IMG/VR virus record: IMGVR_UViG_3300032236_001850
Span: 124,001 to 188,000 of that record
Direction: 5' to 3' (one strand)
Length of the DNA stretch: 64,000 nt
The translations under genes and the position numbers were made by a program. Below are positions 1 to 39,885 of this stretch, in pieces; position 1 is the first letter of the stretch; each line of letters opens with the position of its first letter. The notes under the pieces were generated by a model. It saw only the letters and a program-made list of their open reading frames with translations, did not search any database and had not been told where the DNA came from.

Positions 1-1
1 C

Positions 2-2062
2 AATTCAGTTGCAAAGAAATCCAATGTATGGGATTCTCATACTACCTACAATATGGGTGACGTTGTTATAGGCCCAGATAATTGGGTCTATGCTTCCTTG
101 GTTGGTGGTAATAATAATGTAAATCCAGCAGGCTATGATATGTTTAATCTTCCATACGGTACAGGTGCATTTGATAATCAAGGTGGAACAGGAGGAATAT
201 TCTCGGTACCACCGTGTAAAGATTGGGGATATCATCCGTATGCTCCTGTTGACACCAGAAGATTCTGGTTGAGATTTTGGCCGGTTATTTACAATTGGTT
301 TGCTCCCTGGGGAAATCTAAATTCAAAATGGAATGACTTAGATAATGCACCAGATTCGGACCCATATTCAGTGTATTTTGTGGGTAATGCAGATTTTGAT
401 TATGTGAGTTCAGGAACATTCTGCCAACCGATATCAATTAGTATGTATCCTGGAGAACCTACAGAAGTACGAACATTTGGAGGGGATAATGATAATGTTA
501 GTGGAGAGGGTGGTGCATTTAATCTTGACTATGTAAGTGATATTGATCTAGGAACACCATCAAACGTTTCGCAGAGTGGTTACGTTCACACTGACGGTTT
601 AGCGAGAGGATGGAATCCTCCATTCAACGATCATCCCGGAGGTGATACGAAATACCCAAGAGAGGATGTTCAGGGTAATTTATATGTTGGTAGTTCATAC
701 GTAAACGATAATAGAATAGTTACATTTCCCTATGTTGCGCTTGCCGTTGCACCAGGATCACCAGTATCACCAAGAGATTCAGCCCTATCGTACCTATTGG
801 GTGATCCTAATGGTGGATTTGTTTCAGGAATATATTTTGGAAGCAATTCAGCTTCCAATACATTCTATGTGTATCCACAAGATAATTCCTCTAGATATAA
901 AATATGGGCAAGTGAGATAAGTGGACCTACAGATCCATATTTCGTTAATTATACCTATGGAGGTCAATATACGTTAGGAGCCTATGATGGAAGCACGCCA
1001 CAAAGTGCAGGAATAGAATGGGTGGAGAATGATCTGGATTATGATGCTTATAACGACGATTGGCCTAATAAGGACAGGATAGCGGAAAGAGATCCTTTCC
1101 CGACCAACACCTTTGGTGATTGCCATTTCGGAGATAATTTCACGGGTAATGTTGCTTTCTGTGCTATAACATGGGAAAATGTTGACGAAAAAACGGTAAG
1201 AAATAATCCAAGTTATCTCCTGGTAGATGATCCTTCACTTACATTCCCTGTTGATGGGGTTTTCCGTGGGGTAACTATGAAAACCAACAACAGATATAAT
1301 ATTTTTCTACATGGAGTAAATGGACTGGATATTAAATCAAGCGATTCCACAATATTTGAAACCATAAGCAACAATAGAGGTGAATTATCGCAATTTAATA
1401 TCTGTAGAAATTTAACCGATGTGGAGCTAGGTAAATCCAGATATAACTCACTTTATGGGTTAATTGGGGTTTACCAATCGGGCACAATGATTCATAATTA
1501 TATCGAGAATGTTCATAATAGTTCAATGAAGGATGGCATGTGGTACAACACTATGACATTTTTCAACCGTGGACCAAAAGGATGGACTATTGTAGCAGAT
1601 AACAGAGATTGGGCTACCTTCTATATAAGCGAGGGAAACACATACTCGGAGGGATTCCAAGAAAATAGATTCAGGGGATCTTCTATAGCTTCCTCGTACG
1701 GTAATTATTTCTTTAAAAATGGGACTCTTTTTCCTTTCGGAAATGAGTCCATATTACCAATAGACGTCAGAACATCCTCATTTGGTCCACATCAAATCGA
1801 TAATAGTATAGGAAAATTTTATAACACCACAGTTGAAACATCAGCAATGAATGGACTCGATGTTAGCAGACCAACCTATCTACAATTGTATTTTAACAAG
1901 AGAATATTAAGACCAACTAGATGGAACGCAGAAGGAGGTAGTTGGACCTATGGGGATTTCCCAATGATACACTTCTATGATAACTCAGGTTACATATTTT
2001 ACCAACAATACGGAAGTACATCGCAATACAATACACCGGATGGACCAAGACCAAATTTCTAA
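2..2062 (+). CDS. Large G/N/D-rich putative virion structural (fibre/spike-like) protein, 5' partial
   Basis: Frame is open from position 2 (ORF track starts at ATG 53); G/N/D/Y-rich, with NxFG-like repeats; no catalytic motif seen. Confidence 0.5.
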   Translation, partial: NSVAKKSNVWDSHTTYNMGDVVIGPDNWVYASLVGGNNNVNPAGYDMFNLPYGTGAFDNQGGTGGIFSVPPCKDWGYHPYAPVDTRRFWLRFWPVIYNWFAPWGNLNSKWNDLDNAPDSDPYSVYFVGNADFDYVSSGTFCQPISISMYPGEPTEVRTFGGDNDNVSGEGGAFNLDYVSDIDLGTPSNVSQSGYVHTDGLARGWNPPFNDHPGGDTKYPREDVQGNLYVGSSYVNDNRIVTFPYVALAVAPGSPVSPRDSALSYLLGDPNGGFVSGIYFGSNSASNTFYVYPQDNSSRYKIWASEISGPTDPYFVNYTYGGQYTLGAYDGSTPQSAGIEWVENDLDYDAYNDDWPNKDRIAERDPFPTNTFGDCHFGDNFTGNVAFCAITWENVDEKTVRNNPSYLLVDDPSLTFPVDGVFRGVTMKTNNRYNIFLHGVNGLDIKSSDSTIFETISNNRGELSQFNICRNLTDVELGKSRYNSLYGLIGVYQSGTMIHNYIENVHNSSMKDGMWYNTMTFFNRGPKGWTIVADNRDWATFYISEGNTYSEGFQENRFRGSSIASSYGNYFFKNGTLFPFGNESILPIDVRTSSFGPHQIDNSIGKFYNTTVETSAMNGLDVSRPTYLQLYFNKRILRPTRWNAEGGSWTYGDFPMIHFYDNSGYIFYQQYGSTSQYNTPDGPRPNF

Positions 2063-2074
2063 TACGTAGGAATT

Positions 2075-2779
2075 TTAAAAACCGAGATCTCCAAGGGTTG
2101 ACATATCACTTAGACCTTCGCCGCCCTCACCCTCGAATCTTTTCCAAATTTCAGGTGCATATTTCTTAAGCAGGCTTAAGATCTCGAATGATTTCTGTGG
2201 ATATTTTTGGAGTGTTGAATTAAGCATCTCCATATCTGAGAAGAGAGTGAGCACTAAGGATTTTATCTTTGGTGTGTTGATTTTTTCTATTTCGTCTATA
2301 ATGCTTGGAATACTAAAATTTCCTTCATCAGTTCCGAAATAGGAGCATTCAAACTTTCCACCAACCTTAACAGGAAACCCTTCAAGAGTAACAAGTGGGT
2401 TGTACCATATATTATAATCTCTACCAACTTCAATAGGTCCGCCTTCTAATGATTTTATGCTGTTATTATTAACTAGGAAACTACCGCCAACTTTTGTAGG
2501 AGAGCCTTCCAAAGATTCCAATCCACAATTTGTAAATTGAAAATCCCCAGTAACTTCACCAAATTGAACTCCTTTAAAATCTCTACAAACAAGTTTTGAT
2601 TTTGTGTCATTCTCTCCGAATTTAACATCACCTTTCACATTAACCAGACCTGTTGATCTATCAAAGTCCCATTTGTCACCTGCAACCTTATTCAGGAAGA
2701 AGAATTGGTCCATTGAAGGACCATTATCATCATCCATATCAGAGGATTCGAAAATTTCGTATGCTTTTATATTTTTCAT
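2075..2779 (-). CDS. 22-aa LRR-type repeat protein with CTS-like leader
   Basis: Starts MKNIKAYEIFES; repeats SLEGSPTKVGGSF / SLEGGPIEVGRDY / TLEGFPVKVGGKF; ends LGDLGF. Confidence 0.8.
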   Translation of the reverse strand: MKNIKAYEIFESSDMDDDNGPSMDQFFFLNKVAGDKWDFDRSTGLVNVKGDVKFGENDTKSKLVCRDFKGVQFGEVTGDFQFTNCGLESLEGSPTKVGGSFLVNNNSIKSLEGGPIEVGRDYNIWYNPLVTLEGFPVKVGGKFECSYFGTDEGNFSIPSIIDEIEKINTPKIKSLVLTLFSDMEMLNSTLQKYPQKSFEILSLLKKYAPEIWKRFEGEGGEGLSDMSTLGDLGF

Positions 2780-2781
2780 AA

Positions 2782-3342
2782 TTATGTAAATTTTGTTGCT
2801 CTTTTAGCTTTTATTAATTTTGTATACAAATCCCTGTTTGGAAGTTTATTTAGAATTTCTTGTAAATCCTCCGAATCCACAAATCTCATTATTCTGGGTG
2901 GGTTTTTTATTAGAGAATCAATAACACATTGATCAAAATCATCAGTTCCGTTATTTTTAAATATCTCATCAACATTACTAAAAACTTTTTTAAATTCCTC
3001 AATTATTTTGTACGGATTTCTTTCAATACACCAGAATGAGTACTTCTCATTATTTCTTGGTTTAAGTCCACTCCAGGCTTCATAGTCCATATTGTCGGCA
3101 TCTTGACTATTCATTAATTCACCAACCTCACTCATAAGCATATAAAGATCAGTCACTGTTGAAGCATCAGCTTCCTCAGCAAACTCTGAAATAACAACCG
3201 CAGCTGCATCAAAGAAATCCTTAGCAACCACGATCAAGTAACCAATCGTTGATACCTCCCTGCCAGTTATTTCCATATAGAAAACAAATCCCATCATATC
3301 AGATTTGTCATTTAGTTCCTCGTATAGTTTAATGTTTCTCAT
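2782..3342 (-). CDS. Hypothetical protein with CTS-like leader
   Basis: Starts MRNIKLYEELND; ATGA overlap with upstream gene. Confidence 0.8.
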   Translation of the reverse strand: MRNIKLYEELNDKSDMMGFVFYMEITGREVSTIGYLIVVAKDFFDAAAVVISEFAEEADASTVTDLYMLMSEVGELMNSQDADNMDYEAWSGLKPRNNEKYSFWCIERNPYKIIEEFKKVFSNVDEIFKNNGTDDFDQCVIDSLIKNPPRIMRFVDSEDLQEILNKLPNRDLYTKLIKAKRATKFT

Positions 3343-3965
3343 AAAAATCCTCTTTTTAATGCCCTTCCTATATGGGAAAAATCCTTTATTCCCGCTTTAT
3401 CCATGATTTTTTTCTTTAAATCCGGACACGGATTCAGAATATAAGTTGATGTTGGTTTGTCCTTAAAGAATTTAATAACCTTCGATTCTGGGATTCTTGT
3501 TATTAAAGATTTTATAAGATCTGGATTTCCACAGTCTATTAGCGGCTCCAAATTTTCGGGATCATCCAGGTATTTTCTATTTGACATATCATAGTCATAA
3601 AGTTCCTTAACTGCAAATTTTTCTATCCCTCTAAATATTGACTCGTAATCGGAAACACTAGACACACTAAATCCCATAATGTATTCCCAATCAAAATCTT
3701 TAAATTCGTAAATACCAATTCTTATCTTATCGTTGGATGTTGGTGTCATCTCTCTCAATTCATACTTCAACACAGTTTCATCCTCACCATGTGGATAAAT
3801 GGTTATCTTAGTTACCTTGCCGTCCTGTTTTTGTTCTGTGTTAATATCCGCCCATTCGGAAATTTTCTTATATGCATCAAGATTTCCCAATGAACCAACA
3901 TAAGGTCTATAAACATTCTCGTTGATTTTTCTTCCGAAAAGATTGAAAGATTTAATTATTCTCAT
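3339..3965 (-). CDS. Hypothetical protein, CTS-like leader plus TGIKD C-terminal module
   Basis: MRIIKSFNLF...; ends KAGIKDFSHIGRALKRGFL; GATATATA at 3970-3977 on minus strand. Confidence 0.85.
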   Translation of the reverse strand: MRIIKSFNLFGRKINENVYRPYVGSLGNLDAYKKISEWADINTEQKQDGKVTKITIYPHGEDETVLKYELREMTPTSNDKIRIGIYEFKDFDWEYIMGFSVSSVSDYESIFRGIEKFAVKELYDYDMSNRKYLDDPENLEPLIDCGNPDLIKSLITRIPESKVIKFFKDKPTSTYILNPCPDLKKKIMDKAGIKDFSHIGRALKRGFL

Positions 3966-3983
3966 CCCTTATATATCCCAAAT

Positions 3984-4069
3984 AAAAAAGGTTGGAGTAG
4001 CGAATTCCAACCTTTACATAGCCGTAACTATTCCGGTCCTAAAATCTGACTTCAGAGAGTCAGCCGGAT
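3984..4069 (-). ncRNA. Candidate structured small RNA (unidentified)
   Basis: AATATATA promoter variant at 4074-4081 (minus); stems UCCGG/CCGGA and CUGACU/AGUCAG, a UACG-loop hairpin, then terminator GGUUGGA/UCCAACC-U6; no ORF. Confidence 0.45.
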
Positions 4070-4137
4070 GTTCTATATATTCTTTGCATCCCAATTTTTA
4101 GGTCGAAATTTGATATATAAACCAAAAACATAATAAA

Positions 4138-4773
4138 ATGAGAAAAGCATGCATCGTGTTATTTCTTTTGGTTTTTGGAGTGATTAATGCTCAAGACACC
4201 ATAAGACTTAAACACACAAACTACACTGCTGTCTACAGCAAGACTTTAAATTACCCAGTACTTGTTGAATGGTGGGAAACCAAAGCAAAGGACGGATGTC
4301 CAAGCCCATTAAAAAGAAAAGATGAATTCAAACCAGATCCGCTTCTACTTAAGGAGACAGATATAGCGAAGGATTATGTTGGATCAGGGTATGACAGGGG
4401 ACATATGTGCCCAGCAGCTTCCAATCTATGTAGTGGTGATAAAGTTCAATCTGAATGCTTCTATTTCAGCAATATGGCACCGCAGCTTCACAGATTAAAT
4501 GCTGGAGATTGGAAAGTATTAGAGATGAAAACAAGAGAGATAGCGATTGCTAATGACAGTGTACATGTTTGGTGTGGTAGCTTGGGAGAGATTAAAAAAG
4601 TTGGTAAGATATCAATACCTAAAACCTGTTGGAAAGTGGTTTACATCAAGAAAACAAAAATCTTTACAGCATACATTTTCAATAATGATGATTCAAAACC
4701 AGACGGAATAGAAAACAATATAGTTCCTCTGGAAGCAGTAGAAAAATTAACAGGATATAAATTTAAAAGGTAA
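4138..4773 (+). CDS. DNA/RNA non-specific endonuclease (NucA/EndA type) with signal peptide
   Basis: YDRGHMCPA motif, FYFSNMAPQ, LNAGDWKVLE; hydrophobic N-terminus ending VINA-QD. Confidence 0.92.
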   Translation: MRKACIVLFLLVFGVINAQDTIRLKHTNYTAVYSKTLNYPVLVEWWETKAKDGCPSPLKRKDEFKPDPLLLKETDIAKDYVGSGYDRGHMCPAASNLCSGDKVQSECFYFSNMAPQLHRLNAGDWKVLEMKTREIAIANDSVHVWCGSLGEIKKVGKISIPKTCWKVVYIKKTKIFTAYIFNNDDSKPDGIENNIVPLEAVEKLTGYKFKR

Positions 4774-4806
4774 AAAAAAGGCTGATATCAATATCAGCCT
4801 TTTTTT
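4773..4806. terminator. Bidirectional intrinsic terminator
   Basis: A7-GGCTGATAT-caa-TATCAGCC-T run between convergent genes. Confidence 0.85.
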
Positions 4807-5569
4807 ATATCATTCCAGATTTTAGTTTTCTACCTATTTTTCCGTAATCTTTTAACCCTGTCCTTTCCAATACTCCAGCCTTAAATTTCTCAAGATTGTC
4901 GATCTTATAGAGTTCCAATGGATTTTTCTTGAAAAAATTATCAATATCCTCAAGAACATCATAATTTATAGGATCGCCGATTTTTAATTTAAGTATGTAC
5001 TCTAGATATTTTCTAATGAAATTGGAATATTCCGGAAGATGTAATTTTTTACTCTCCAAACCAGCATAAGTCATATAAAATCTACCCCCATATTCTCTAA
5101 AAGCTAATAAAATTTGGGATATAATAAGATGAAAAATATAGTTATTATCTCCGCTAACCTCTATTTGTCTCTCCCCAGCTTCATCAGTTCCTATATAATC
5201 AAATTTATTCTCGTCAGATTCGCCAATTACAAATCTTATTTTATAAACATTTGAACCTGATCCAAGACCAGGAGAGCAACTCATTATTTTTTCATTGGGT
5301 TCTGGGTTTAGAGCCTGGGTAAAAGCATAACTTATTGTTCCCCAAAGGAAATATGTATTTAATATAACATCAAGTGTCTTGAGCCCATTTGATTTATAAT
5401 CATAGATATCACCAGCATCATAATTAGGAAAAACATGTAGACCAACAGCTTGAGAGTGATTATTTTTATCCACTCTAAAAGTTATACATTTTTCCAAATA
5501 ATGGTATATTGGAATACGATCAATTGATTCTGATTCAAAAAGTTGATCAAAGGATTTTATTATTTTCAT
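4805..5569 (-). CDS. Hypothetical protein, CTS-like leader plus TGIKD module
   Basis: MKIIKSFDQLFES; ends RTGLKDYGKIGRKLKSGMI. Confidence 0.85.
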   Translation of the reverse strand: MKIIKSFDQLFESESIDRIPIYHYLEKCITFRVDKNNHSQAVGLHVFPNYDAGDIYDYKSNGLKTLDVILNTYFLWGTISYAFTQALNPEPNEKIMSCSPGLGSGSNVYKIRFVIGESDENKFDYIGTDEAGERQIEVSGDNNYIFHLIISQILLAFREYGGRFYMTYAGLESKKLHLPEYSNFIRKYLEYILKLKIGDPINYDVLEDIDNFFKKNPLELYKIDNLEKFKAGVLERTGLKDYGKIGRKLKSGMI

Positions 5570-6684
5570 TATATGAGCCCTCCTCTTAATTTTCTACCGA
5601 TAGCACTAAAATCTTTAATCCCAGTTCTTCTTAAAACACCAGCTTTATATTCTGGATAATCATCAAGTAAATAAAGATCCGTTGGATTTTTTTTCATATG
5701 GTCATCTAGGATTTTTTCAACTTCGGAACTCAAAGATGAACCAAGAAGATAACTTCTAGCAAAATCGGTGAGCAAATTGGATTTTTCATTCATATCTATA
5801 TAGTTTTCACCTATATAAATATTCAAATGTTCGATTTCCGTAGTGATTATCTTCTCTATTTCTTTAACCACCTCATCAATAGTTTTATAACCAAGATAAA
5901 TTTTAATATCTCTCATCTTTTTACTACGACCATGAAGATCAAGGTTTCGATCGACATTTTTGCTTGTTACCTTTTTACCTTCCCCTTTCGGTATAATTCG
6001 GATTTCATTTGCATTGGTACCAATCATGTATTGATTATTGTTTCTTTTTACAGCACCGCTTATTTCCAATATAAAATCAGGGAAAATACGTATGCCAGCT
6101 AAGGCCAAATAACGAAAATTTATCACAATCCCAGCATTTTTACCTTGCATATAAATACCACTAATCGAATTAATATGATCTATCAATTTGGATTTACCCT
6201 TGATTAAAGAGAAATCTGTTATGATGTCGCTTCTTCTTTCTTTTCTGTATACAACATATAAATCGATTGGGAGTTCCCATATCTTGGAAAAGATGAAAGC
6301 ATCATCGTCAACAAGCTCTTTTGCTTCCTTCCTATTGAAATCATTAGGTGCAAACTTATAAACAATATCTCTGATGAAAGTTTGAAGCAGATCCACAAGA
6401 TTCGAAGAGTATTTCATACCGTAATGGCTCCCACTTGAAACAAAGGTAAAGTGCCAATCGCTTCCAGATTTATAAAAGTATGGGCTGCCCGGATTGTTAA
6501 CATAGTCACTGGTGTTTTTGTTTATCAACACATTTATTCTACCGGTTCTTGTTGGGTAAAGTCTATACCATTTTTGAATTTGCTCGAGTTCTCTAGTTCC
6601 TTCGGCTAGTCTGAAGAACTCCTCACAGTCCTCATTCATTTTGGCTGCTTCAAAAAGTTCATTAAAAGTTTTAATTATTCTCAT
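5569..6684 (-). CDS. Hypothetical protein, CTS-like leader plus TGIKD module
   Basis: MRIIKTFNELFEA; ends RTGIKDFSAIGRKLRGGLI; GATATATA at 6689-6696 (minus). Confidence 0.85.
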   Translation of the reverse strand: MRIIKTFNELFEAAKMNEDCEEFFRLAEGTRELEQIQKWYRLYPTRTGRINVLINKNTSDYVNNPGSPYFYKSGSDWHFTFVSSGSHYGMKYSSNLVDLLQTFIRDIVYKFAPNDFNRKEAKELVDDDAFIFSKIWELPIDLYVVYRKERRSDIITDFSLIKGKSKLIDHINSISGIYMQGKNAGIVINFRYLALAGIRIFPDFILEISGAVKRNNNQYMIGTNANEIRIIPKGEGKKVTSKNVDRNLDLHGRSKKMRDIKIYLGYKTIDEVVKEIEKIITTEIEHLNIYIGENYIDMNEKSNLLTDFARSYLLGSSLSSEVEKILDDHMKKNPTDLYLLDDYPEYKAGVLRRTGIKDFSAIGRKLRGGLI

Positions 6685-7921: not shown

Positions 7922-8554
7922 ATGAAAATAATAAAGACATTCGAGAGTTTCGAGGAGAAGGAATACACCTTTGATGAACTATCACAAGATGCAAAGAATC
8001 ATGCAATAGAGAACGAGAGAGGTTCATTGTATGACAGTATGGGTGATTGGTGGTACGAAGGAACAATAGAGGATGAAGCACAAAAACTAAGGGATGAGGG
8101 ATTTGAAGATGTTGATATACAATTTTCAGGATTCCACAGTCAAGGTGATGGAGCTTCATTTACTGGCAGAGTATCAGACATTAAACTTTTTGTTAAAGGC
8201 ACTCTCGATATGAAAACCATGAGCGACCAGGTTTTAGATAACATTTACATCTCAGTGGTTAGAACAGACACCAGACACGTTCATGAAAACTCGGTTAGGT
8301 TTGATTGTGAAGTTGACGGTGAGGAAGAAATAGTTTTATTCAGAGCACCAGGTTCAAATCTAGATATAAAAATATCAATTCAGTCTCAGTGTGATAAAAT
8401 AGAAGAAGTCGGAGCACCTTGGGTCAAGAGTAGATGTAAGGAGATATATGAAAAACTCGGTAAGGAGTACGACAGCTACTTTGAAGAGGAACACATAATA
8501 GCAGACATTAAAGCAAACGACTGTAAGTTTGACGAAGACGGAGATTTAATTTAA
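7922..8554 (+). CDS. YTFxELS-family phage protein with CTS-like leader
   Basis: YTFDELSQDAK..., FSGFHSQGDGASF; GATATATA 4 nt upstream; paralogous to 9805..10410. Confidence 0.85.
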   Translation: MKIIKTFESFEEKEYTFDELSQDAKNHAIENERGSLYDSMGDWWYEGTIEDEAQKLRDEGFEDVDIQFSGFHSQGDGASFTGRVSDIKLFVKGTLDMKTMSDQVLDNIYISVVRTDTRHVHENSVRFDCEVDGEEEIVLFRAPGSNLDIKISIQSQCDKIEEVGAPWVKSRCKEIYEKLGKEYDSYFEEEHIIADIKANDCKFDEDGDLI

Positions 8555-13480: not shown

Positions 13481-14038
13481 ATGGGACTAGATATAATGGC
13501 AATCAGTAATCTTGAAAAGAAAATCAAGATGGACCCAAGGGTAAAAGTTCTTTCCTGGCAAATAAGACCTAAGGTAAAAGAAACTAGGATCAAGATAGAT
13601 GTCACACCCTACGGATCAGAACATGGTGGATTTAACAAGTGCGAGGATATGGAAGGTGGTAAATACGCAGAAACTGATGCAACGGTGGAACATCACTTCA
13701 GAGCAGGTAGCTACGGAGGTTATAACACATTCAGAAAATATCTTTCCAGAGCTTTATGTGGTGTTGAACCAGAAGCTATATGGGCTACACCAGAGGATTT
13801 TAAAGCTGCACCAATGTTTGAGATGATAAATTTCAGCGACTGTGAAGGCATTTTAGGAACGGGGATTTGTAAAAAAATTCACCCACAATTTGTTGAAAAT
13901 AGAGAGAAATTTGAAAACTATCTTAAGGAGCAATTTGGTTATGACGAAAATGAAGTAAGATGGCAAATGTCAACCTATGACGATTTCACAGAGGCATTTA
14001 GATTGGGAGCAGAAAATGGAATAGTAGTTTACACGTAA
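13481..14038 (+). CDS. Conserved-type phage hypothetical (MGLDI... family)
   Basis: MGLDIMA start, FRAGSYGGYN, FSDCEG; early promoter. Confidence 0.85.
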   Translation: MGLDIMAISNLEKKIKMDPRVKVLSWQIRPKVKETRIKIDVTPYGSEHGGFNKCEDMEGGKYAETDATVEHHFRAGSYGGYNTFRKYLSRALCGVEPEAIWATPEDFKAAPMFEMINFSDCEGILGTGICKKIHPQFVENREKFENYLKEQFGYDENEVRWQMSTYDDFTEAFRLGAENGIVVYT

Positions 14039-14280
14039 TGAAACTAATAACAATAAAAATACAAACAGTACTAGGGGAAAATGAAGAGTTTGATGATTTA
14101 TTTTTCCAATATTTGGATGAGTACTCGATAGATCGTAATGTGCTACCAATAGAGGAGGGTGAGGCATACCCAATGGTTGAATACACATCAGGACCAATTG
14201 CTTTAGGTAACATGCTTAGAGAAAGATTTGGCTATGACAGATACGAAATAGAGGAGAAATTTCCAGAACTAATCGAATAA
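14038..14280 (+). CDS. Acidic hypothetical protein
   Basis: TAATG coupling. Confidence 0.8.
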   Translation: MKLITIKIQTVLGENEEFDDLFFQYLDEYSIDRNVLPIEEGEAYPMVEYTSGPIALGNMLRERFGYDRYEIEEKFPELIE

Positions 14281-14324: not shown

Positions 14325-14353
14325 AAAAAGGTCTGATTACTCAGACCTTTTTT
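14325..14353. terminator. Bidirectional intrinsic terminator
   Basis: A5-GGTCTGA-ttac-TCAGACC-T run. Confidence 0.85.
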
Positions 14354-14357
14354 GATT

Positions 14358-15179
14358 TTATTTTGTTCCAGTTGAAAGTCCAAATGCTGCCTGAGCGTCC
14401 TTTGCATTAACGTCTCCTCCATCCTCGCCGAAAAATTTTCTAGCCCCACTTACTATTTTACCCAGTAATCCTCCAGGATTTTCCTTTGCATCTTTCTCAT
14501 CATTATTAGAAGTTGCAGAGTCACCTCCGATAATATCATCTCCAGGTAAACGTCTTTCTGCATTATCCTTACTAACATCAATCATATCTTTCTTAACAGC
14601 TTCAGTGAAGCTATTATCAAAATCGCTACTTCTGTCCGGGAAGTAATCTATAAATCCAAGAAGACCGTCAACTAGGACAGATCTATTATATGCACCTACA
14701 CCCTGTCCGTCTTTTAGTCTAACATTACCCTCAATTGTTGTGAATTTCTTACCGTTATAATCAACACTAGTAACTATTCCAGCATGACCACCACCCTCTC
14801 TTTTTGCAATCATTATTTGACCAGGTTTAACTAGAGAAAAATTAGATCTTGCCTGATCTGCAGTTATCTTTTTACCCCCGGTTTTTTCCCATTCCTCCAA
14901 TGCAGAACCAGTTTTATATACTGGATTGGTGATTCCACTTTTTTTACTGAACTCGTCAAAAATATAGTAAATGAAAGCCATACACCAAGGCTGACCGTCA
15001 CTTATTCCTACTGATCTCTGAAATTTATTAACATCGGAACCACTATTGTTACCGACCTCCTTCGCTTTTATATTATTTGATATAACCTTAGCTAGCTCAG
15101 ATCCAGCTCCTGATGGATTATCTAATTTGAATCCGGAGTCTTCATTTATAAATTCATTGAAACTCTTTAATCTTTCCAT
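14358..15179 (-). CDS. CHAP-domain peptidoglycan hydrolase with CTS-like leader
   Basis: GQPWCMAF (Cys), GGHAGIV (His), TIEGN; leader MERLKSFNEFINE. Confidence 0.88.
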   Translation of the reverse strand: MERLKSFNEFINEDSGFKLDNPSGAGSELAKVISNNIKAKEVGNNSGSDVNKFQRSVGISDGQPWCMAFIYYIFDEFSKKSGITNPVYKTGSALEEWEKTGGKKITADQARSNFSLVKPGQIMIAKREGGGHAGIVTSVDYNGKKFTTIEGNVRLKDGQGVGAYNRSVLVDGLLGFIDYFPDRSSDFDNSFTEAVKKDMIDVSKDNAERRLPGDDIIGGDSATSNNDEKDAKENPGGLLGKIVSGARKFFGEDGGDVNAKDAQAAFGLSTGTK

Positions 15180-15287
15180 ATTTATTTGTATTTTGTCTTC
15201 TATATATCAAAAAAATATTCCTTATAATTTTTTTATTTAAAAAGAATTTCATATATTTGCAATGTAAATCAATAAAACAAAATAAAA

Positions 15288-15686
15288 ATGGCAAAAATAC
15301 AAGAAGAGGAGCACATCCTCATAGCAGTAAGAGGTTCACTTAACGAGGAAGTTAGAGTTGAAACAATTAAAATCTCAGAGAAGGATGAGGAATTTGAGGC
15401 CGATGGTTTTGAAGACTTTGGAGAATATGCAGACTATGTTCTAGAGAACTCTGCAGGAGAATACGAACAAGGATTTTGTGCAGTTCTAACAATCAATGCA
15501 AGCCAGAAAGATGAACTTATCAGAAAACTTGGTGGATTTACTAGAGAAGACATGGAGTTCTCATTCAACGCTGGAGGTAACCACAGAGAGGAATCAATAG
15601 AATTTGACATGGATGAAATCGAAGAAATCACTGAACCAAATTTTGTGGATTGGATGGCTCAGGAGTTTTCAGAGGAAACAGAATAA
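15288..15686 (+). CDS. Acidic hypothetical protein
   Basis: 132 aa after early promoter. Confidence 0.85.
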   Translation: MAKIQEEEHILIAVRGSLNEEVRVETIKISEKDEEFEADGFEDFGEYADYVLENSAGEYEQGFCAVLTINASQKDELIRKLGGFTREDMEFSFNAGGNHREESIEFDMDEIEEITEPNFVDWMAQEFSEETE

Positions 15687-15704
15687 TAAAGACTATATAA
15701 AATT

Positions 15705-15735
15705 AAAAAGTCCGATATTGCTATCGGACTTTTTT
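15705..15735. terminator. Bidirectional intrinsic terminator
   Basis: A5-GTCCGATA-ttgc-TATCGGAC-T6. Confidence 0.85.
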
Positions 15736-16414
15736 ATGCGGTTAGTGTTTTGTTTATATTGTTTATTGTTGATGTTAATTTTCTTTCGTAATCTGGAGCT
15801 GAAGCATATCTCTGATTGTTTACATTAACAAACTTTTTTAATAACTCAGGAGCAGTTTTATTCTGGGAAGGAACCACATAACTCTTAGCCATTGTTCTAT
15901 AGTAAGCATCGATACCAGATTGCCAATCATTATGGTTAACAACTGCACCGCTATCAACATTACCAACATTGAATGGATTTTTAGTTCTGATTGGTTTATT
16001 TGATGTGTCTCTACTTAAACCACCCTCCAACGTTAACTGAGCTAAAGCAAGTTGTGGAGGAATATAAGCACCGTGATCCATCACGGCCTTTTTCGCACCG
16101 AGGGCTAGCATTTCACCTTTTATTGGGGATGATGGATTAGTTTTATCAATCCATTTTTGAGCAATATCAGCATAAGCTTTAAATCCTTCAGAAGTTTTAA
16201 GATCCAACGGTGTAAAAATGCTTCCGTCATTAACATTATTTAGACCCAAACTCTTAAGAGCTATTTGATCCGCGGTGTCAGGAATGTCAAGATTCAAAGA
16301 ACCTGTTCCGGTGGTATCGCTATCTGATTTAGCATTAAGTGCATTACTAATTAATAAGGCAGGGTTAAAATCCATCTCATTAATAAAGTCACCAAAAGAT
16401 TTTATGTTGTTCAT
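15734..16414 (-). CDS. GH73 glucosaminidase with CTS-like leader
   Basis: LAQLTLEGG, NPFNVG, YASAPDYERKL; probable start MNNIKSFGDFINE at 16414. Confidence 0.82.
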   Translation of the reverse strand: MNNIKSFGDFINEMDFNPALLISNALNAKSDSDTTGTGSLNLDIPDTADQIALKSLGLNNVNDGSIFTPLDLKTSEGFKAYADIAQKWIDKTNPSSPIKGEMLALGAKKAVMDHGAYIPPQLALAQLTLEGGLSRDTSNKPIRTKNPFNVGNVDSGAVVNHNDWQSGIDAYYRTMAKSYVVPSQNKTAPELLKKFVNVNNQRYASAPDYERKLTSTINNINKTLTA

Positions 16415-16517
16415 ATCTATTTGTATTTTATCATCTATATATCCAAAAAATATATTCAATAATTTTTTTATTTGGAAATGATTTCATATATTTGCAACGT
16501 AATCAATAAACAAAATA

Positions 16518-18221
16518 ATGGAATCAGGTACACTACAATTTTGGACAACTGGCGAGGCCTATATGGGCTTAATGAACGACTTTTTTAGATCTGGAGAATT
16601 TGAAAAATATCATCAGCTGCTTGGGGATGGCAACTTAGACAGAGCACAAAAGATGATGGCATTCAGATATAGAATGGTCCTAAGTGGGGACACTAGAACG
16701 GAGGAGGGTTTAAGCTGTTCTTTTCTACCAGAAGAGCCAAAAGACTTCAATAAAACACTATATTATGCTATTAGAACAGCTATCGTTGCAGCTAATAGAA
16801 AACATGATAGATGGAACGATAAAACTCTGGAAATAAGAGAGATTGCTAAATCCGGCTACCGAGATATTGTTACTCTACTAGAATATTTTCCAGTTGAGGA
16901 AATCTATAAGAGATGCTACAAATACATCATAGAGGAGGAAGGTTATACGTTAACCACTCTCTACGATGCAATAACTAAAAATGACCATACAATCTCGGGT
17001 CTTCTAATGAGAAACGGTGAGTTTGCTCAATGTGGTTACCAGGATCACATCTCACTGTATCCATTTCTTGTTCAACTTGGACTTGTAGAGGGTGAGGACA
17101 GATTGGATTGCGATGCAGTATCAATATCATCTAATATGTTATGTGGTGCTGCTGCTTTTGGGTTGGAATCTCTACATTTTGACCTTAATAAAAGGTATCA
17201 TCTCAGTGATGAGCAGATGACAGAGTTATGGCGACTTAGAGAATATCATCTACAGCACTACACTAGCAATGAGAAAAGATCAGTATCGGAAGGAATTCGT
17301 GAATTTTTCTGCTACAAAGAAGCAATGGGTGCTAAGTATGGCAACATTATGTTTCTAAAAAGATTTTTTCCACATATCAAAACATGCGAGGTTTCCAAAG
17401 ATTTCAGACCAGATTGGAAAGCCAACTTTGTTAGAACCTCACCAAAATATTCAATTCCTGGTCTTCTACATAGTATTAAAGCTAACGACGAGCAAGAAGC
17501 ACATAATGCTGTGCTACAAATCCAGAAAGACTTCGAAAAACATAAGGAAGTTCGGGGAAGAAACAATATACATTGGTTCTATCAGGAGTACTTGGAAGGG
17601 GAGAACGGTGTACTCAATTGCATAAAAACAACGGAGGTTAGCCGTGGATATGCAAGAGAATATGCTAATCTGATGGAATATGACATAAAGATAGCATGTA
17701 GCTCGGTTCAAGGTGACATTGTGGGTGGTAAGAAATCAAGCTTTGAAATAAGTTTAGACGATCAATCAGCACTAAGAAAGATTGCTAGAGAACTTGCAAC
17801 CACTTTCGAGGAAGACATCCAGCTAGAATTTGTAAGAGTTGCTGAGGGTGACATCAGAATAGTTCAATTCAGAACCCTGAAGGGAAGTCCACAGGTAAAC
17901 TTCGAACCACAGAAGGAAGAGTTGGAAAAAGCTATAGTGATTGGTAAAACTTTCTGCAAACCGTACTACACAAATAATGGCGACGAAATAAACACCAACG
18001 ATATTCTGGTTGTTGAAGAGGATTGCGAATCAGAAGCTCTATTGGGTAAGAAAGCACTTATAGTTGAGAATGACACAAACTTCTCGCACATTCTCGCACT
18101 ATCCAAAGCCCTAAATATTCCATCTATATACGGCACAGGTAAGGTTGATCTACCTAAGGACAAACAGGTTTGGTTTAATACAGGATATGGTACGGGGTAT
18201 GTAAAAATAATCACCAAATAA
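16518..18221 (+). CDS. PEP-synthase/PPDK-like ATP-grasp plus phospho-His swivel-domain protein
   Basis: VRTS, QEYLEGENGV, IQLEF...IVQFRTL (ATP-grasp-like) and DILVV...FSHILALSKALNIPSIYG (mobile His domain); no TIM-barrel part. Confidence 0.7.
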   Translation: MESGTLQFWTTGEAYMGLMNDFFRSGEFEKYHQLLGDGNLDRAQKMMAFRYRMVLSGDTRTEEGLSCSFLPEEPKDFNKTLYYAIRTAIVAANRKHDRWNDKTLEIREIAKSGYRDIVTLLEYFPVEEIYKRCYKYIIEEEGYTLTTLYDAITKNDHTISGLLMRNGEFAQCGYQDHISLYPFLVQLGLVEGEDRLDCDAVSISSNMLCGAAAFGLESLHFDLNKRYHLSDEQMTELWRLREYHLQHYTSNEKRSVSEGIREFFCYKEAMGAKYGNIMFLKRFFPHIKTCEVSKDFRPDWKANFVRTSPKYSIPGLLHSIKANDEQEAHNAVLQIQKDFEKHKEVRGRNNIHWFYQEYLEGENGVLNCIKTTEVSRGYAREYANLMEYDIKIACSSVQGDIVGGKKSSFEISLDDQSALRKIARELATTFEEDIQLEFVRVAEGDIRIVQFRTLKGSPQVNFEPQKEELEKAIVIGKTFCKPYYTNNGDEINTNDILVVEEDCESEALLGKKALIVENDTNFSHILALSKALNIPSIYGTGKVDLPKDKQVWFNTGYGTGYVKIITK

Positions 18222-29884: not shown

Positions 29885-29939
29885 AAATATTTTTTTATTC
29901 AAAAAGAATTTCTTATATTTGCATATCAAATCAATCAAA

Positions 29940-30140
29940 ATGCAAACAGCAACACTTAGAAGATCGGTTTATACAAAATTTGGAGGTTATTACCCTAAGG
30001 GAGCAAAGGTGGAGGTTGATACAATTGATATGGCTAATGACAGGGTATCAATAAAAAAACTAAACTATGAAGGTCCGATAAGGGTTTCACTTAAACCTAA
30101 GGATTTAATTTTCAATATAAAATGGAAACAACTGACATGA
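29940..30140 (+). CDS. Small protein, C-terminal WKQLT
   Basis: ATG 29940 after early promoter. Confidence 0.8.
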   Translation: MQTATLRRSVYTKFGGYYPKGAKVEVDTIDMANDRVSIKKLNYEGPIRVSLKPKDLIFNIKWKQLT

Positions 30141-30583
30141 TATTTAGCAATTCCTTTTATGGAGCATTTCCTGACATGAAAGGGGAATTGATGCGCAGAA
30201 AAGAGCTTGAAGAAAAATTAGACAGAAAAAGAGGAGAAAATTTTATTAATAAGGGTGATTCGATTTCACATTTTCTAATGAAGGATTTCATTATAAACGA
30301 TGATGGAACGGAAAGACCTATAAAACTCAAAGATATATGCTTCGGAAAACCATTTCAGGGTTTAATTCCATCAAGACCCAGCATTTATGCTGTAACTTCA
30401 GTTCATTATGTAGCTGGTTACAAAATAGTTATAAAAAGATTTCAGGACACTTCAGACGACATCATTTGGTATGAAACACCAATAGACCATTACTACTGCA
30501 AAATATCAGAACTGGAGGGAGTAATACACGAACATCTACTCGAAGCAATACAAAGGGATTCAACATGGAACAGAGTAAAATAG
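30122..30583 (+). CDS. Hypothetical protein, C-terminal WNRVK
   Basis: 19-nt overlap start. Confidence 0.8.
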   Translation: METTDMIFSNSFYGAFPDMKGELMRRKELEEKLDRKRGENFINKGDSISHFLMKDFIINDDGTERPIKLKDICFGKPFQGLIPSRPSIYAVTSVHYVAGYKIVIKRFQDTSDDIIWYETPIDHYYCKISELEGVIHEHLLEAIQRDSTWNRVK

Positions 30584-30912
30584 GATTCTTTATAATCAGA
30601 ACGTTCGACGATCTTGTGTTTACTAGAGACGATTTTAGTGGATATCCTGATCAGTACACTGTGGAGATGCTAGAAAGAATAACCCCATTCAGAGCAAGAA
30701 TGAAATTCGAAAAGGAGTTTGGAGGAGATGACACGGAAGCTAGTGTGATCTATGGGGCATCAACATACTCAACCAAAGGAAGGGATGGGGAATATGACAC
30801 ATTTGAGGTTTGGTATTCGGATGAGGATGAACCTAGAGGTTACGAAACCAAGGAACAAATAAATGCAGAATTTCTAAGAAGGAGTTTAAATAAAACATCA
30901 CTGGAGTTATGA
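30565..30912 (+). CDS. Hypothetical protein
   Basis: 19-nt overlap start; ATGA coupling to next gene. Confidence 0.8.
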   Translation: MEQSKIGFFIIRTFDDLVFTRDDFSGYPDQYTVEMLERITPFRARMKFEKEFGGDDTEASVIYGASTYSTKGRDGEYDTFEVWYSDEDEPRGYETKEQINAEFLRRSLNKTSLEL

Positions 30913-38216: not shown

Positions 38217-38561
38217 ATGGATAAAACAACTACAGAAAATATTCTAATAGACTATATCAGCCATGATGTATTCAAAAAAAATATGAGACTGGATCACAGT
38301 TCGGGTATAGCCACAACCGTGGAATATATGATTTTAGATATCAGAAACATCCATTGTCATATAGAGGAAATAAAGATAGGTAAATCAAATTTACCAACAT
38401 TGGATAACCGATTTTTTGCTTACATAAAAATTAGAGGTGTGGAAAAAGCTATAATGTCACACTTTTATCCAATGTTCAATGTTTCTAATTTTGTAGCTGA
38501 ACATATAGGCAGGAACTTAATTTGGGTTGATATATACACTACAAATAAACAAATCAAATGA
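38217..38561 (+). CDS. Hypothetical protein
   Basis: 114 aa; LIWVDI near C-terminus. Confidence 0.75.
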   Translation: MDKTTTENILIDYISHDVFKKNMRLDHSSGIATTVEYMILDIRNIHCHIEEIKIGKSNLPTLDNRFFAYIKIRGVEKAIMSHFYPMFNVSNFVAEHIGRNLIWVDIYTTNKQIK

Positions 38562-38878
38562 ACATAATCAAAACCTTCGAAAGCTTCCATGCATTCGATA
38601 TGAACAACGAAAAGCTAGGGGTGGAAGGTCTAAGCAAATTCATAGGTAAACCACTTCTTGGTGGATATATCACAAACCCATTTGTTAATAATGCAGCTTC
38701 AGTTGGAGTGATGATTAGCGACACTCCAGACTCAGAACCAAATGATACGGATAACAAAATTCTATTTTGGATTAACGATTACTTTTGGCAATTGGATGGT
38801 CTTAGAGATAAGAAAACACCAAAGGATGAACAACTTCTTTCAGAGATGGCCAAAGTAATAGATGCAAGTGTACAGTAA
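38558..38878 (+). CDS. Hypothetical protein with CTS-like leader
   Basis: MNIIKTFESF; GATATATA at 38529. Confidence 0.8.
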   Translation: MNIIKTFESFHAFDMNNEKLGVEGLSKFIGKPLLGGYITNPFVNNAASVGVMISDTPDSEPNDTDNKILFWINDYFWQLDGLRDKKTPKDEQLLSEMAKVIDASVQ

Positions 38879-39009
38879 TGTGGTTATTAGATTTAATATT
38901 TGGCAGAAGAATAGATCCTAAGGCTGAGGTCGAAAAGGAACTAACATCAAAATACGGAAAGGATTGGCACAGATACGACGGAATCATTCACTGGGTCAGA
39001 CTAAGATGA
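38878..39009 (+). CDS. 43-aa peptide ending IHWVRLR (not in ORF track)
   Basis: TAATG coupling; carries the C-terminal tag. Confidence 0.65.
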   Translation: MWLLDLIFGRRIDPKAEVEKELTSKYGKDWHRYDGIIHWVRLR

Positions 39010-39026
39010 GCCAAGATATATAGTTT

Positions 39027-39512: not shown

Positions 39513-39516
39513 AGAA

Positions 39517-39885
39517 ATGATTAAGAAATACGACGATTTTATTAATGAATCAATAGGTTCCACATTCACACCTGAACAGCAGGAAATCATAAAAAATTTT
39601 GCTAAGGATCTGGAAAAGGTTTCATTGTATAAAATAAGTACAGAAACAGATAGTTCAAAATTTGAAATAAAGATGAATAAGTATTCTAATTTGTATGAAT
39701 ATGTCTATTCATGCTACATCAGCAATCGTATTTTATATCTAAGAAATTATAAAAGAAGAACATCGGGTTCATTAAGAGGTGTTATCTCTAATTTTCATGA
39801 GGAGTCACCAGAATCTCTAGAGGATGCATTGGGTATTATTGCAAAGAATACAGTTAAACAATACGAATTTAAAAGAATAAAATAA
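39517..39885 (+). CDS. Hypothetical protein, CTS-like leader plus FKRIK tail
   Basis: MIKKYDDFINES...YEFKRIK. Confidence 0.8.
   Translation: MIKKYDDFINESIGSTFTPEQQEIIKNFAKDLEKVSLYKISTETDSSKFEIKMNKYSNLYEYVYSCYISNRILYLRNYKRRTSGSLRGVISNFHEESPESLEDALGIIAKNTVKQYEFKRIK

What the first reader, a model, noticed from the sequence alone, without database searches (positions are those of the whole stretch)
14358..16414. Two peptidoglycan hydrolases of different chemistry carry the CTS-like leader
Seen: CHAP amidase (14358..15179) and GH73 glucosaminidase (15734..16414), each a solitary minus-strand gene with GATATATA, near-identical upstream spacers (tttgtatttt...tctatatatc) and a flexible low-complexity segment. 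Inference: head-packaged, ejected wall-opening enzymes rather than endolysins, inserted as mobile late cassettes among early genes.
Basis: partly seen in the sequence, partly recalled or inferred. Interest (0 to 1): 0.6.

Follow-up and report, generated by a model that had tools for sequence, protein, structure and literature searches.

The report
Capsid-tagged wall-cutting enzymes of a megaphage
Two small cell-wall-cutting enzymes of a 434-kb phage of Bacteroidota start with a short tag that closely resembles the signal phage T4 uses to load proteins into its head, so they are probably carried in the virus particle and not used only to burst the cell; this still needs proteomics.

Summary
Window 14358-15179(-) encodes a CHAP peptidoglycan hydrolase and 15734-16414(-) a GH73 glucosaminidase. 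Each is a one-gene minus-strand unit with GATATATA 21 nt before the ATG, a hairpin terminator after the stop, a shared 13-residue N-terminal leader (M..[LI]KSF..FINE) and a disordered segment.

The window lies in a complete 434.5-kb T4-superfamily megaphage with a gp23-type capsid protein and a gp21-type S77 protease fused to LAE-rich scaffold repeats. GATATATA also precedes the portal, the protease and a lysin, so it behaves as a late promoter. About 62 genes carry the leader. The leader matches the T4 capsid targeting sequence at the four residues that matter there and ends in I-x-E, the gp21 cleavage motif. Among orthologues it is as conserved as the catalytic domains. Other huge-phage clades attach different [LI]-x-E leaders to the same GH73 domain.

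A leaderless PG_binding_1+GH19 lysin next to membrane proteins is the likelier endolysin. "Head-packaged, not the endolysin" is therefore plausible but unproven. "Ejected to open the wall" is an inference. "Mobile cassettes" is not supported: both genes keep their place and antisense layout in relatives down to 43-45% identity. This is a new variant of a known kind (CTS cargo).

The parts
14358..15179 (-). CHAP peptidoglycan hydrolase gene (273 aa). Residues 1-13 are the leader, about 15-220 the folded enzyme, 221-273 a disordered tail.
   Evidence: Pfam CHAP 5.2e-9. C66, H132, E150 and N152 are invariant in 32 homologues. AF2 mean pLDDT 80.8. Foldseek finds the LysGH15/LysK CHAP domains, MepS and Tse1.
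15141..15179 (-). Leader codons of CHAP (MERLKSFNEFINE); predicted cut after E13 (I-N-E).
   Evidence: Leader HMM score 24.5 bits. Mean conservation among orthologues is 0.75 for the leader, 0.63 for the next segment and 0.79 for the domain. T4 CTS rules are from PMC9026906.
14361..14519 (-). C-terminal low-confidence tail of CHAP (residues 221-273), with conserved LPGD.IIGG and GG.LGKI.SGA.KF motifs.
   Evidence: pLDDT 36-54; consensus.
15201..15208 (-). GATATATA box of the CHAP unit, 21 nt before the ATG (late-type promoter motif).
   Evidence: The same motif precedes the portal, prohead protease, an Hc2-like gene and the GH19 lysin.
14325..14352 (.). Hairpin terminator after the CHAP stop; palindromic, so it probably also ends the convergent + gene 14038-14280.
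   Evidence: 12-13 bp stem, T-run on both strands.
15734..16414 (-). GH73 (FlgJ/LytB-type) glucosaminidase gene (226 aa). Residues 1-13 are the leader, 14-48 a disordered linker, 50-226 the folded enzyme.
   Evidence: Pfam Glucosaminidase 8.4e-8. E130 is invariant in 40 homologues. AF2 mean pLDDT 80.5. Foldseek finds LytB, FlgJ and Auto.
16376..16414 (-). Leader codons of GH73 (MNNIKSFGDFINE); predicted cut after E13.
   Evidence: Leader HMM score 23.8 bits. Mean conservation is 0.86 for the leader, 0.62 for the linker and 0.87 for the domain.
16271..16375 (-). Low-complexity Ser/Asp/Thr/Gly linker of GH73 (residues 14-48).
   Evidence: pLDDT 35-44; least conserved segment.
16436..16443 (-). 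GATATATA box of the GH73 unit, 21 nt before the ATG.
15705..15734 (-). Hairpin terminator that begins at the GH73 stop codon.
   Evidence: 13 pairs.
15246..15262 (+). Host-type promoter core (ATTTCATATATTTGCAA, containing TAnnTTTG) for the divergent + gene 15288-15686. It forms the other half of the shared spacer.
   Evidence: 22 copies in the window (21 plus-oriented) against 1.1 expected; genome-wide consensus ATTATTTTTTTATTT..TTTC.TATATTTGCA lies 10-30 nt before 41 starts.
16481..16497 (+). The same host-type promoter core for the divergent + gene 16518-18221.

Best explanation
The two genes encode stand-alone peptidoglycan hydrolases: a CHAP amidase/endopeptidase and a GH73 N-acetylglucosaminidase. 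They belong to a complete 434.5-kb T4-superfamily megaphage of a Bacteroidota host.

Proposed mechanism, with the status of each step:
1. Each gene is its own transcription unit. It is read antisense to the surrounding host-promoter (probably early) genes from a GATATATA late-type promoter and closed by a hairpin terminator. The sequence layout is shown; the timing is inferred.
2. Each protein starts with a 13-residue amphipathic propeptide, M-x-x-[LI]-K-S-F-x-[DE]-F-I-N-E. This is this lineage's version of the T4 capsid targeting sequence.
3. The propeptide docks the protein onto the scaffolding core of the assembling prohead (inferred).
4. The phage's gp21-type S77 protease then cuts after I-N-E and frees the mature enzyme inside the head (inferred from motif identity).
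5. The enzyme travels in the virion and leaves with the DNA at the next infection. In the periplasm it would help open or remodel the wall for a very wide, long-lasting entry. This is the least certain step.
6. Host lysis is more likely done by a separate leaderless PG_binding_1+GH19 lysin that sits beside small membrane proteins.

The two enzymes are part of a set of about 62 leader-tagged proteins. The set includes two further wall-active enzymes (an SLT transglycosylase and a YkuD/Tlde1-like L,D-transpeptidase), so the cargo resembles the peptidoglycan effector sets of type VI secretion systems.
For: Phage type: Gp23 capsid protein 7e-42 and a Peptidase_S77 domain 1.8e-8. The protease is fused to 13 tandem 14-residue repeats, each holding L-A-E (or V/I-A-E, L-G-E). 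That is the L/I-x-E motif cut by T4 gp21 (PMC9026906).

Leader against the T4 CTS MKTYQEFIAE: T4 Y4, F7, I8 and E10 correspond to F7, F10, I11 and E13 here. In T4, residues 4 and 7 target and residues 8 and 10 govern processing.

Leader family: 62 N-termini score at least 8 bits, against 4 of 1812 internal-Met controls. The association with GATATATA has odds ratio 17.6, p = 6e-20. [FLYW][ILV]NE occurs 15 times in the first 20 residues against 3.8 expected.

Selection acts on the peptide: the leader is as conserved as the catalytic domains in orthologues down to about 40% identity, with synonymous and AGT/TCT serine codon differences.

Leader swapping: in 66 IMG/VR loci the same GH73 domain carries other short leaders, many ending [LI]-T-E. 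All 5 large genomes of that kind that were tested encode an S77 protease.

Cultured relative: in Chryseobacterium phage MA9V-1 the small ORF between 'capsid assembly protein' and the prohead protease starts MKTFTCFINE, and its capsid protein N-terminus holds WSEFINEA.

Late motif: GATATATA precedes the portal (phrog_213, 3.5e-55), the protease, an Hc2-like gene and the GH19 lysin.

Alternative endolysin: a leaderless PG_binding_1+GH19 protein at genome 4319-5140. In the same minus-strand cluster are a 154-aa protein with two hydrophobic segments, a 110-aa glycine-rich hydrophobic protein that falls below the TM threshold used, and signal-peptide proteins.

Other points: neither hydrolase has a signal peptide, a TM segment or a wall-binding domain. 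No Phage_lysozyme or M23 domain was found, and the genome's only SLT and CHAP domains are in leader-tagged small proteins.
Against: There is no direct evidence of packaging, cleavage or ejection; everything rests on sequence analogy.

Leader-tagged proteins include enzymes one would expect in the cytoplasm: adenylate kinase, an RNase T-like exonuclease, a RimK-type ATP-grasp enzyme and, with a weak leader, a DNA ligase. Either a very broad cargo is injected or the tag means something other than head targeting.

Sixty-two cargo species is several times more than is known for T4.

Proteins ejected through a contractile tail are usually thought to reach the cytoplasm, so how they would reach the periplasm is unexplained.

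The timing of GATATATA transcription is inferred from which genes it precedes, not measured.
Confidence: 0.55

Rival explanations
1. They are lysis-phase enzymes: auxiliary or main endolysins that attack several bonds of the wall at the end of infection. The N-terminal peptide would then be a general late-protein tag, for example a regulatory or inhibitory propeptide or a handle for release, and not a head address.
For: Late-type promoter. CHAP and GH73 domains are common in endolysins, and the best fold matches are endolysins and autolysins. Large phages can carry several lysins.
Against: There is no holin, spanin or membrane-protein gene in either one-gene unit. The proteins have no signal or SAR sequence and no wall-binding domain. 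The same tag sits on ATP-dependent cytoplasmic enzymes and a MoxR-type chaperone. A leaderless PG_binding_1+GH19 lysin with hydrophobic-protein neighbours exists, and the same leaderless lysin also occurs in another clade beside a leader-tagged GH73.
Confidence: 0.17
2. They are virion-associated hydrolases mounted on the tail or baseplate and not stored in the head. The leader would be an assembly handle for the tail tip.
For: Most known virion-associated peptidoglycan hydrolases are tail parts. No lysozyme domain was found in any large structural protein, so the tail may borrow free enzymes. One Foldseek match is the CHAP domain of the phi812 hub protein.
Against: The genes are far from the structural region (about 240-400 kb). 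The proteins are small and stand-alone. The leader matches a head-targeting and head-protease motif, and the same motif occurs in the capsid protein N-terminus and in the head-core ORF of a cultured relative.
Confidence: 0.1
3. The leader sends proteins somewhere else, for example to the membrane through its amphipathic helix, to a replication or assembly compartment, or to a phage chaperone. The resemblance to the T4 CTS would be convergent.
For: The cargo is very heterogeneous and includes nucleotide and DNA enzymes. The peptide is a generic amphipathic helix.
Against: The match to T4 covers exactly the four functionally mapped CTS residues and ends in the gp21 motif. Scaffold repeats and capsid protein N-termini carry the same [LI]-x-E or F-I-N-E motifs. 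The leader co-occurs with S77 proteases in every clade checked.
Confidence: 0.13
4. The shared leader and spacer are only the footprint of a duplicated promoter-plus-start-codon cassette spread by recombination, as in mobile regulatory cassettes. The peptide would have no function of its own.
For: The two upstream regions are 74% identical over 143 nt, and the 5' UTR is shared by only three genes.
Against: Residues are conserved while codons differ: 64% nucleotide identity against 9 of 13 residues, with AGT against TCT for serine. The strongest-scoring leaders (40 genes) average only 51% nucleotide identity to each other. The leader is retained at 43-45% protein identity in a relative with 47% GC. 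In the upstream alignment 14 sites group by gene and 3 by genome, so the two copies pre-date the split of the two genomes. The positions are syntenic.
Confidence: 0.04

Closest known systems
[quoted passage not shown]
   Same: A short N-terminal propeptide with aromatic residues three apart followed by I-x-E. A gp21-type S77 protease and a gp23-type capsid protein are encoded by the phage. The tag sits on unrelated cargo proteins. Expression goes with the head genes.
   Different: The leader is 13 residues, not 10. There are about 62 tagged genes instead of a handful. The cargo includes peptidoglycan hydrolases, which are not known CTS cargo in T4, where the wall-opening enzyme is the gp5 lysozyme of the baseplate. 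Nothing has been shown experimentally here.
T7 gp16 (internal core / ejection protein with a lytic transglycosylase domain)
   Same: A wall-cutting activity stored inside the head and ejected at infection to help DNA entry.
   Different: gp16 is a large structural core protein of a podovirus and forms the ejection channel. Here the enzymes are small, free and propeptide-tagged, in a T4-type phage.
Ejection and inner-body proteins of phiKZ, 201phi2-1 and SPN3US
   Same: Giant phages that package dozens of proteins after cleavage C-terminal to Glu by a gp21-related protease.
   Different: Those propeptides are long and varied, with an S/A-x-E motif and no shared short N-terminal address. They belong to a different phage lineage.
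Type VI secretion peptidoglycan effectors (Tae/Tse1 amidases, Tge glycoside hydrolases, Tlde1 L,D-transpeptidase-like)
   Same: The same combination of chemistries (NlpC/P60-CHAP amidase, glycoside hydrolase, YkuD/Tlde1) delivered by a contractile machine. Tse1 and a T6SS effector appear among the fold matches. The YkuD/Tlde1-like protein gives a below-cut-off Tlde1_dom match.
   Different: T6SS effectors ride on Hcp, VgrG or PAAR and come with immunity proteins. Here loading would be through a capsid propeptide, and no immunity genes are adjacent.
Canonical Gram-negative phage endolysins (holin-endolysin-spanin cassettes)
   Same: The same catalytic families and late expression.
   Different: There are no lysis partners in the unit and no wall-binding or SAR domain. 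The N-terminal address tag is shared with non-lytic proteins. A better endolysin candidate exists elsewhere in the genome.

Membership tests
T4-type capsid targeting sequence (CTS) propeptide | Short (about 10 aa) peptide at the extreme N-terminus of otherwise unrelated proteins | tested here: met
   A 13-aa leader on 62 genes of unrelated families. Orthologues all start with it.
T4-type capsid targeting sequence (CTS) propeptide | Targeting residues: aromatic or hydrophobic at T4 positions 4 and 7 | tested here: met
   F7 and F10 align with T4 Y4 and F7. F10 is conserved in at least 95% of orthologues of both families; F7 in at least 80% of CHAP and at least 95% of GH73 orthologues (rule from PMC9026906).
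T4-type capsid targeting sequence (CTS) propeptide | Processing site L/I-x-E at the end of the peptide | tested here: met
   I11-N12-E13 in both proteins; E13 is nearly invariant. The following residue is mostly A, D, S, V or T in orthologues.
T4-type capsid targeting sequence (CTS) propeptide | Phage encodes a gp21-type (S77) prohead protease and a scaffold cut at the same motif | tested here: met
   Peptidase_S77 36.3 bits, fused to 13 repeats of an L-A-E-type motif.
T4-type capsid targeting sequence (CTS) propeptide | Physical incorporation into proheads, removal of the peptide, presence in virions | not testable with these tools
   The phage is uncultured. The complex prediction gave no answer.
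CHAP domain (PF05257) peptidoglycan amidase/endopeptidase | Profile match above the curated cut-off and an intact Cys-His(-Glu/Asn) catalytic set | tested here: met
   36.9 against 26 bits. C66, H132, E150 and N152 are invariant. The fold resembles LysK/LysGH15 CHAP domains and MepS. Bond specificity was not determined.
GH73 N-acetylglucosaminidase (PF01832) | Profile match above the cut-off, a catalytic Glu and a FlgJ/LytB-like fold | tested here: met
   33.4 against 30.2 bits. E130 is invariant. Foldseek probability 1.0 to LytB and FlgJ, although E-values are only 4e-3 to 3e-2.
Canonical endolysin of a holin-endolysin cassette | Sits beside holin, spanin or membrane-protein genes, or has a signal/SAR or wall-binding domain | tested here: not met
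   Each gene is a one-gene unit between unrelated + strand genes. There is no TM segment and no binding domain. The leaderless GH19 lysin shows these features only in part: it has a PG_binding_1 domain and hydrophobic-protein genes in its cluster.
Tail-borne virion-associated peptidoglycan hydrolase | Hydrolase domain embedded in a large tail, baseplate or tape-measure protein within the structural module | tested here: not met
   The proteins are 226 and 273 aa and stand alone, about 100 kb from the structural genes.
Mobile (regulatory) gene cassette | Variable presence or position among related genomes; paralogous copies more alike within a genome than orthologues are between genomes | tested here: not met
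   The place and orientation are the same in G001 and in the distant locus L035. Fourteen sites group by gene against 3 by genome.

The most novel reading that the evidence does not exclude
T4-superfamily megaphages of Bacteroidota may use a short, clade-specific N-terminal address ending in [LI]-x-E. With it they would load more than a tenth of their gene products into the capsid. That cargo would include a T6SS-like set of four peptidoglycan-active enzymes, a MoxR chaperone, nucleases and nucleotide enzymes, all co-injected with the DNA. The tag is exchangeable: the same GH73 domain carries different tags in different clades. It would therefore amount to a natural, portable protein-packaging code, and the head of these phages would be an effector-delivery compartment on a scale not described before.
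Probability: 0.4. Interest if true: 0.82.

Novelty: new variant of a known kind. Interest (0 to 1): 0.64.

Why it matters
If correct, capsid targeting by a short propeptide, so far studied essentially in T4, is a widespread and greatly expanded system in the largest known phages. It would also show that wall-degrading enzymes can be delivered as head cargo.

It would give an immediate way to predict the virion proteome and the injected proteins of uncultured megaphages from sequence alone, by reading the tag. It would explain how a phage with no detectable T4-type lysozyme, M23 or tail-embedded SLT/CHAP domain could breach the wall. It would also offer a compact tag for packaging foreign proteins in phages of Bacteroidota.

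Cultured relatives that carry the same motif (Chryseobacterium phage MA9V-1) make the idea directly testable.

Tried and rejected
1. Complex prediction of the CHAP N-terminus (residues 1-45) with the S77 protease domain (residues 1-240), using my own alignments. The verdict was 'no answer' (score 0.00), which is no evidence either way.
No read or RNA evidence could be obtained, and read laying was not used.
3. Megablast of the locus and tblastn of GH73 against GenBank phages found nothing. CHAP gave only weak cyanophage hits.
IMG/VR contigs were used instead.
5. Concerted evolution or gene conversion between the two upstream regions was considered because both UTRs read CAAATA in G000 and CAACTA in G001. 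It was rejected as the main signal: only 3 sites group by genome against 14 by gene.
6. The TTG start at 16459 for GH73 was rejected.
8. Literature searches found no description of this leader in Lak, huge or jumbo phages.
9. The large representative protein search was not used, because the word search and family scans settled the protein identities.
Full report
WHAT IS THERE

The window is bases 124001-188000 of a complete virus record: 434,509 bp with direct terminal repeats, 35% GC and about 93% coding, with nearly all genes on the + strand. Window 14358-15179(-) encodes a 273-aa protein with a CHAP domain (5.2e-9). Window 15734-16414(-) encodes a 226-aa protein with a GH73 glucosaminidase domain (8.4e-8). 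Both matches are above Pfam's cut-offs.

The catalytic residues are intact and invariant among homologues: C66, H132, E150 and N152 in CHAP, and E130 in GH73. AlphaFold2 models (mean pLDDT 80.8 and 80.5) show a well-folded enzyme core in each. The first 13 residues are modelled with low confidence. CHAP has a disordered C-terminal tail (221-273) and GH73 a disordered linker (14-48). Foldseek places the cores with LysK/LysGH15 CHAP domains, MepS and Tse1, and with LytB, FlgJ and Auto. Probabilities are near 1 but E-values are modest.

Each gene is a solitary minus-strand gene among + strand genes. Each has GATATATA 21 nt before its ATG and a strong hairpin terminator at its stop. The ATG at 16414, not the TTG at 16459, is the GH73 start.

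THE SHARED SPACER

The intergenic regions of about 108 bp align well, and they resolve into two recurring signals.

On the + strand lies ATTTCATATATTTGCAA, which contains TAnnTTTG. From my own knowledge, this is the -7 box of Bacteroidota promoters. It has 22 copies in the window, 21 of them plus-oriented, against 1.1 expected. Its genome-wide consensus, ATTATTTTTTTATTT..TTTC.TATATTTGCA, lies 10-30 nt before 41 gene starts.

On the - strand lies GATATATA. It occurs 92 times in the genome against about 36 expected. Of the 80 copies outside called genes, 76 lie within 150 nt, and most 4-29 nt, upstream of a same-strand start. It precedes the portal gene (phrog_213, 3.5e-55), the prohead protease (the capsid gene follows directly behind it), an Hc2-like connector gene and a GH19 lysin. 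It therefore behaves as the late promoter; the timing itself is inferred.

Only the 5' UTR (..AAAATACAAATA..) is special to these two genes and one AAA+ gene. Twenty of the 36 minus-strand units begin with GATATATA. The two hydrolase genes are thus instances of a genome-wide layout.

THE LEADER

The two proteins begin MERLKSFNEFINE and MNNIKSFGDFINE. A profile was built from N-termini chosen by rule from this genome. It finds 62 genes at 8 bits or more, against 4 of 1812 internal-Met controls. Thirty-four of the 62 have GATATATA within 45 nt (odds ratio 17.6, p = 6e-20), and most of the rest are downstream genes of such units.

The peptide, not the DNA, is conserved. The two leaders share 9 of 13 residues but only 64% of nucleotides, with AGT against TCT for Ser6, and the strongest-scoring leaders (40 genes) average 51% nucleotide identity to each other. 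Among orthologues down to about 40% identity the leader is as conserved as the catalytic domain and more conserved than the adjoining segment: CHAP 0.75, 0.63 and 0.79; GH73 0.86, 0.62 and 0.87.

WHY IT LOOKS LIKE A CAPSID TARGETING SEQUENCE

The phage has a T4-type capsid protein (Gp23, 7e-42) and a T4 gp21-type protease domain (Peptidase_S77). Its nearest capsid relatives are an uncultured 462-kb phage and the Lak megaphages (44-45% identity). Next come jumbo phages of Flavobacterium, Chryseobacterium and Tenacibaculum. A phage-encoded protein with a T9SS sorting domain also points to a Bacteroidota host.

In T4 the internal proteins are loaded into the prohead by the 10-residue CTS MKTYQEFIAE. 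Residues 4 and 7 direct targeting and residues 8 and 10 direct processing, and gp21 cuts after L/I-x-E (PMC9026906). Here F7, F10, I11 and E13 correspond to T4's Y4, F7, I8 and E10.

The protease is fused to 13 tandem 14-residue repeats of the form YS(E/K)YLAENLDKxIx. This is a scaffold-like region with an L-A-E-type site in every repeat, as expected if the enzyme has T4-like specificity. The motif [FLYW][ILV]NE is concentrated in the first 20 residues of proteins, 15 sites against 3.8 expected, and the capsid protein itself starts MKLINE.

In the cultured Chryseobacterium phage MA9V-1, the small ORF between 'capsid assembly protein' and the prohead protease starts MKTFTCFINE. Its capsid protein N-terminus contains WSEFINEA, and its protease/scaffold protein holds several F-[IV]-N-E sites.

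The GH73 catalytic domain also occurs in 66 IMG/VR loci, many of them from phage genomes of 100-335 kb. There it carries quite different short leaders, such as MGKKxKVRLTEQEL.., MKKxLKEELERIH.. and MGKFTEILKSFSLQETLNP. Many of these end in [LI]-T-E. Neighbouring genes of the same genome share them, and they sit behind a TATTTATA-like motif. All five large genomes of that kind that I tested encode an S77 protease. A catalytic domain that keeps changing its N-terminal tag to match the genome it lives in is what an address label would look like.

ENDOLYSIN OR CARGO

Neither hydrolase has a signal peptide, a TM segment or a wall-binding domain, and neither shares its unit with any other gene.

Elsewhere, at genome 4319-5140(-), there is a leaderless PG_binding_1+GH19 protein with its own GATATATA. 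The same minus-strand cluster encodes a 154-aa protein with two hydrophobic segments, a 110-aa glycine-rich hydrophobic protein below the TM threshold I used, and signal-peptide proteins. The same leaderless lysin occurs in another clade close to a leader-tagged GH73. That is the better endolysin candidate.

I found no Phage_lysozyme or M23 domain. The only SLT and CHAP domains in the genome are in small leader-tagged proteins. Two further wall-active enzymes carry the leader: an SLT protein with a weak leader (10 bits) and a YkuD/Tlde1-like protein with a strong one (22 bits). The set recalls the peptidoglycan effectors of type VI secretion.

CAUTION

The tag also sits on a MoxR-type AAA+ ATPase, which is plausible as a head-assembly chaperone (see PMC7824862). 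It further sits on an RNase T-like exonuclease, a RimK-type ATP-grasp enzyme, an adenylate kinase and, weakly, a DNA ligase. Either the injected cargo is very broad or the tag has another meaning.

No proteomic, transcript or structural evidence could be obtained.

MOBILITY

In the 430-kb relative IMGVR_UViG_3300034116_002156 both genes (73% identity) lie at the same positions. The difference between the two genomes there is six extra small + strand genes between the hydrolases in the relative. In a distant relative with 47% GC, CHAP (43% identity) and GH73 (45%) are again solitary antisense genes with leaders in the syntenic region. In the upstream 143 nt, 14 informative sites group by gene and 3 by genome. 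The cassettes are old, fixed parts of the genome and not recent insertions.

VERDICT

'CTS-like leader, late, probably head-packaged and not the lysis enzyme' is the best reading; I put about 0.55 on the whole chain, with about 0.65 for head targeting and about 0.45 for a role in wall opening at entry. 'Mobile cassettes' is not supported.

CTS-mediated packaging is known from T4. Peptidoglycan hydrolases as CTS cargo, the size of the tagged set, and clade-specific tag swapping in megaphages appear to be undescribed. I rate this a new variant of a known kind.

Noticed in passing
G000 296799-298763 (outside the window; locus L027:8799-10760): The prohead protease is a 654-aa fusion: an S77 domain (aa 37-147) followed by 13 tandem 14-residue repeats YS(E/K)YLAENLDKxIx. 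This looks like a built-in scaffold with a cleavage motif in every repeat. The N-terminal 240 aa have more than 4700 metagenomic homologues (E <= 1e-5), with the 120 listed at 73-99% identity, so this wider phage group is very common.
   Followed up: partly
whole genome; in the window e.g. 2078-6684(-), 7922-8551(+), 38558-53377: About 62 genes (around 10% of all genes) start with the same M..[IL]K.F..F..E leader. The window alone holds 23 of them. Most have no Pfam match.
   Followed up: partly
G000 29892-30623(+) and 229735-230541(+): Two more wall-active enzymes carry the leader: an SLT lytic transglycosylase (weak leader) and a YkuD/Tlde1-like L,D-transpeptidase (strong leader, conserved in the 430-kb relative).
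   Followed up: partly
G000 1-5140(-) (locus L015): A leaderless PG_binding_1+GH19 lysin lies in a minus-strand cluster with a T9SS-sorted (Por_Secre_tail) cohesin/dockerin protein, two small hydrophobic proteins and two signal-peptide proteins. This is a probable lysis module and a clue to a Bacteroidota host.
   Followed up: partly
genome-wide: The distance from GATATATA to the ATG falls into two classes: exactly 4 nt (about 17 genes, which suggests leaderless mRNAs) or 13-29 nt.
   Followed up: no
window 16518-18221(+): A 567-aa protein divergent from GH73 has weak, below-cut-off matches to the PEP-utilising mobile domain and to PPDK_N. It is 89% identical in the relative genome.
   Followed up: no
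loci L036/L037 and L041-L106 (other huge-phage contigs): Other clades have their own N-terminal leader families (e.g. x[LI]TE[SQ][DE]L) on many neighbouring genes, and a TGTATTTATAA-like motif directly upstream. This parallels the GATATATA-plus-leader system here.
   Followed up: partly
window 15100-15140(-) and 16350-16375(-); orthologues: Just after the predicted cut, both hydrolases keep a conserved F-x-[LI]-x-N-P or LNPAL motif. The same motif follows the ILKSFSLQE-type leaders of another clade. Its role is unexplained.
   Followed up: no
G000 384632-385300(+): An adenylate kinase carries a 30-residue N-terminal extension that contains KKFDEFLNE, i.e. the leader motif displaced from the first residue.
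   Followed up: no
G000 87289-88182(+): A second, short (297 aa) Gp23-like ORF lies far from the head module.
   Followed up: no
window 14361-14519(-): The CHAP C-terminal tail is disordered in the model but keeps conserved LPGD.IIGG and GG.LGKI.SGA.KF motifs among orthologues. It may be a second interaction or processing element.
   Followed up: no
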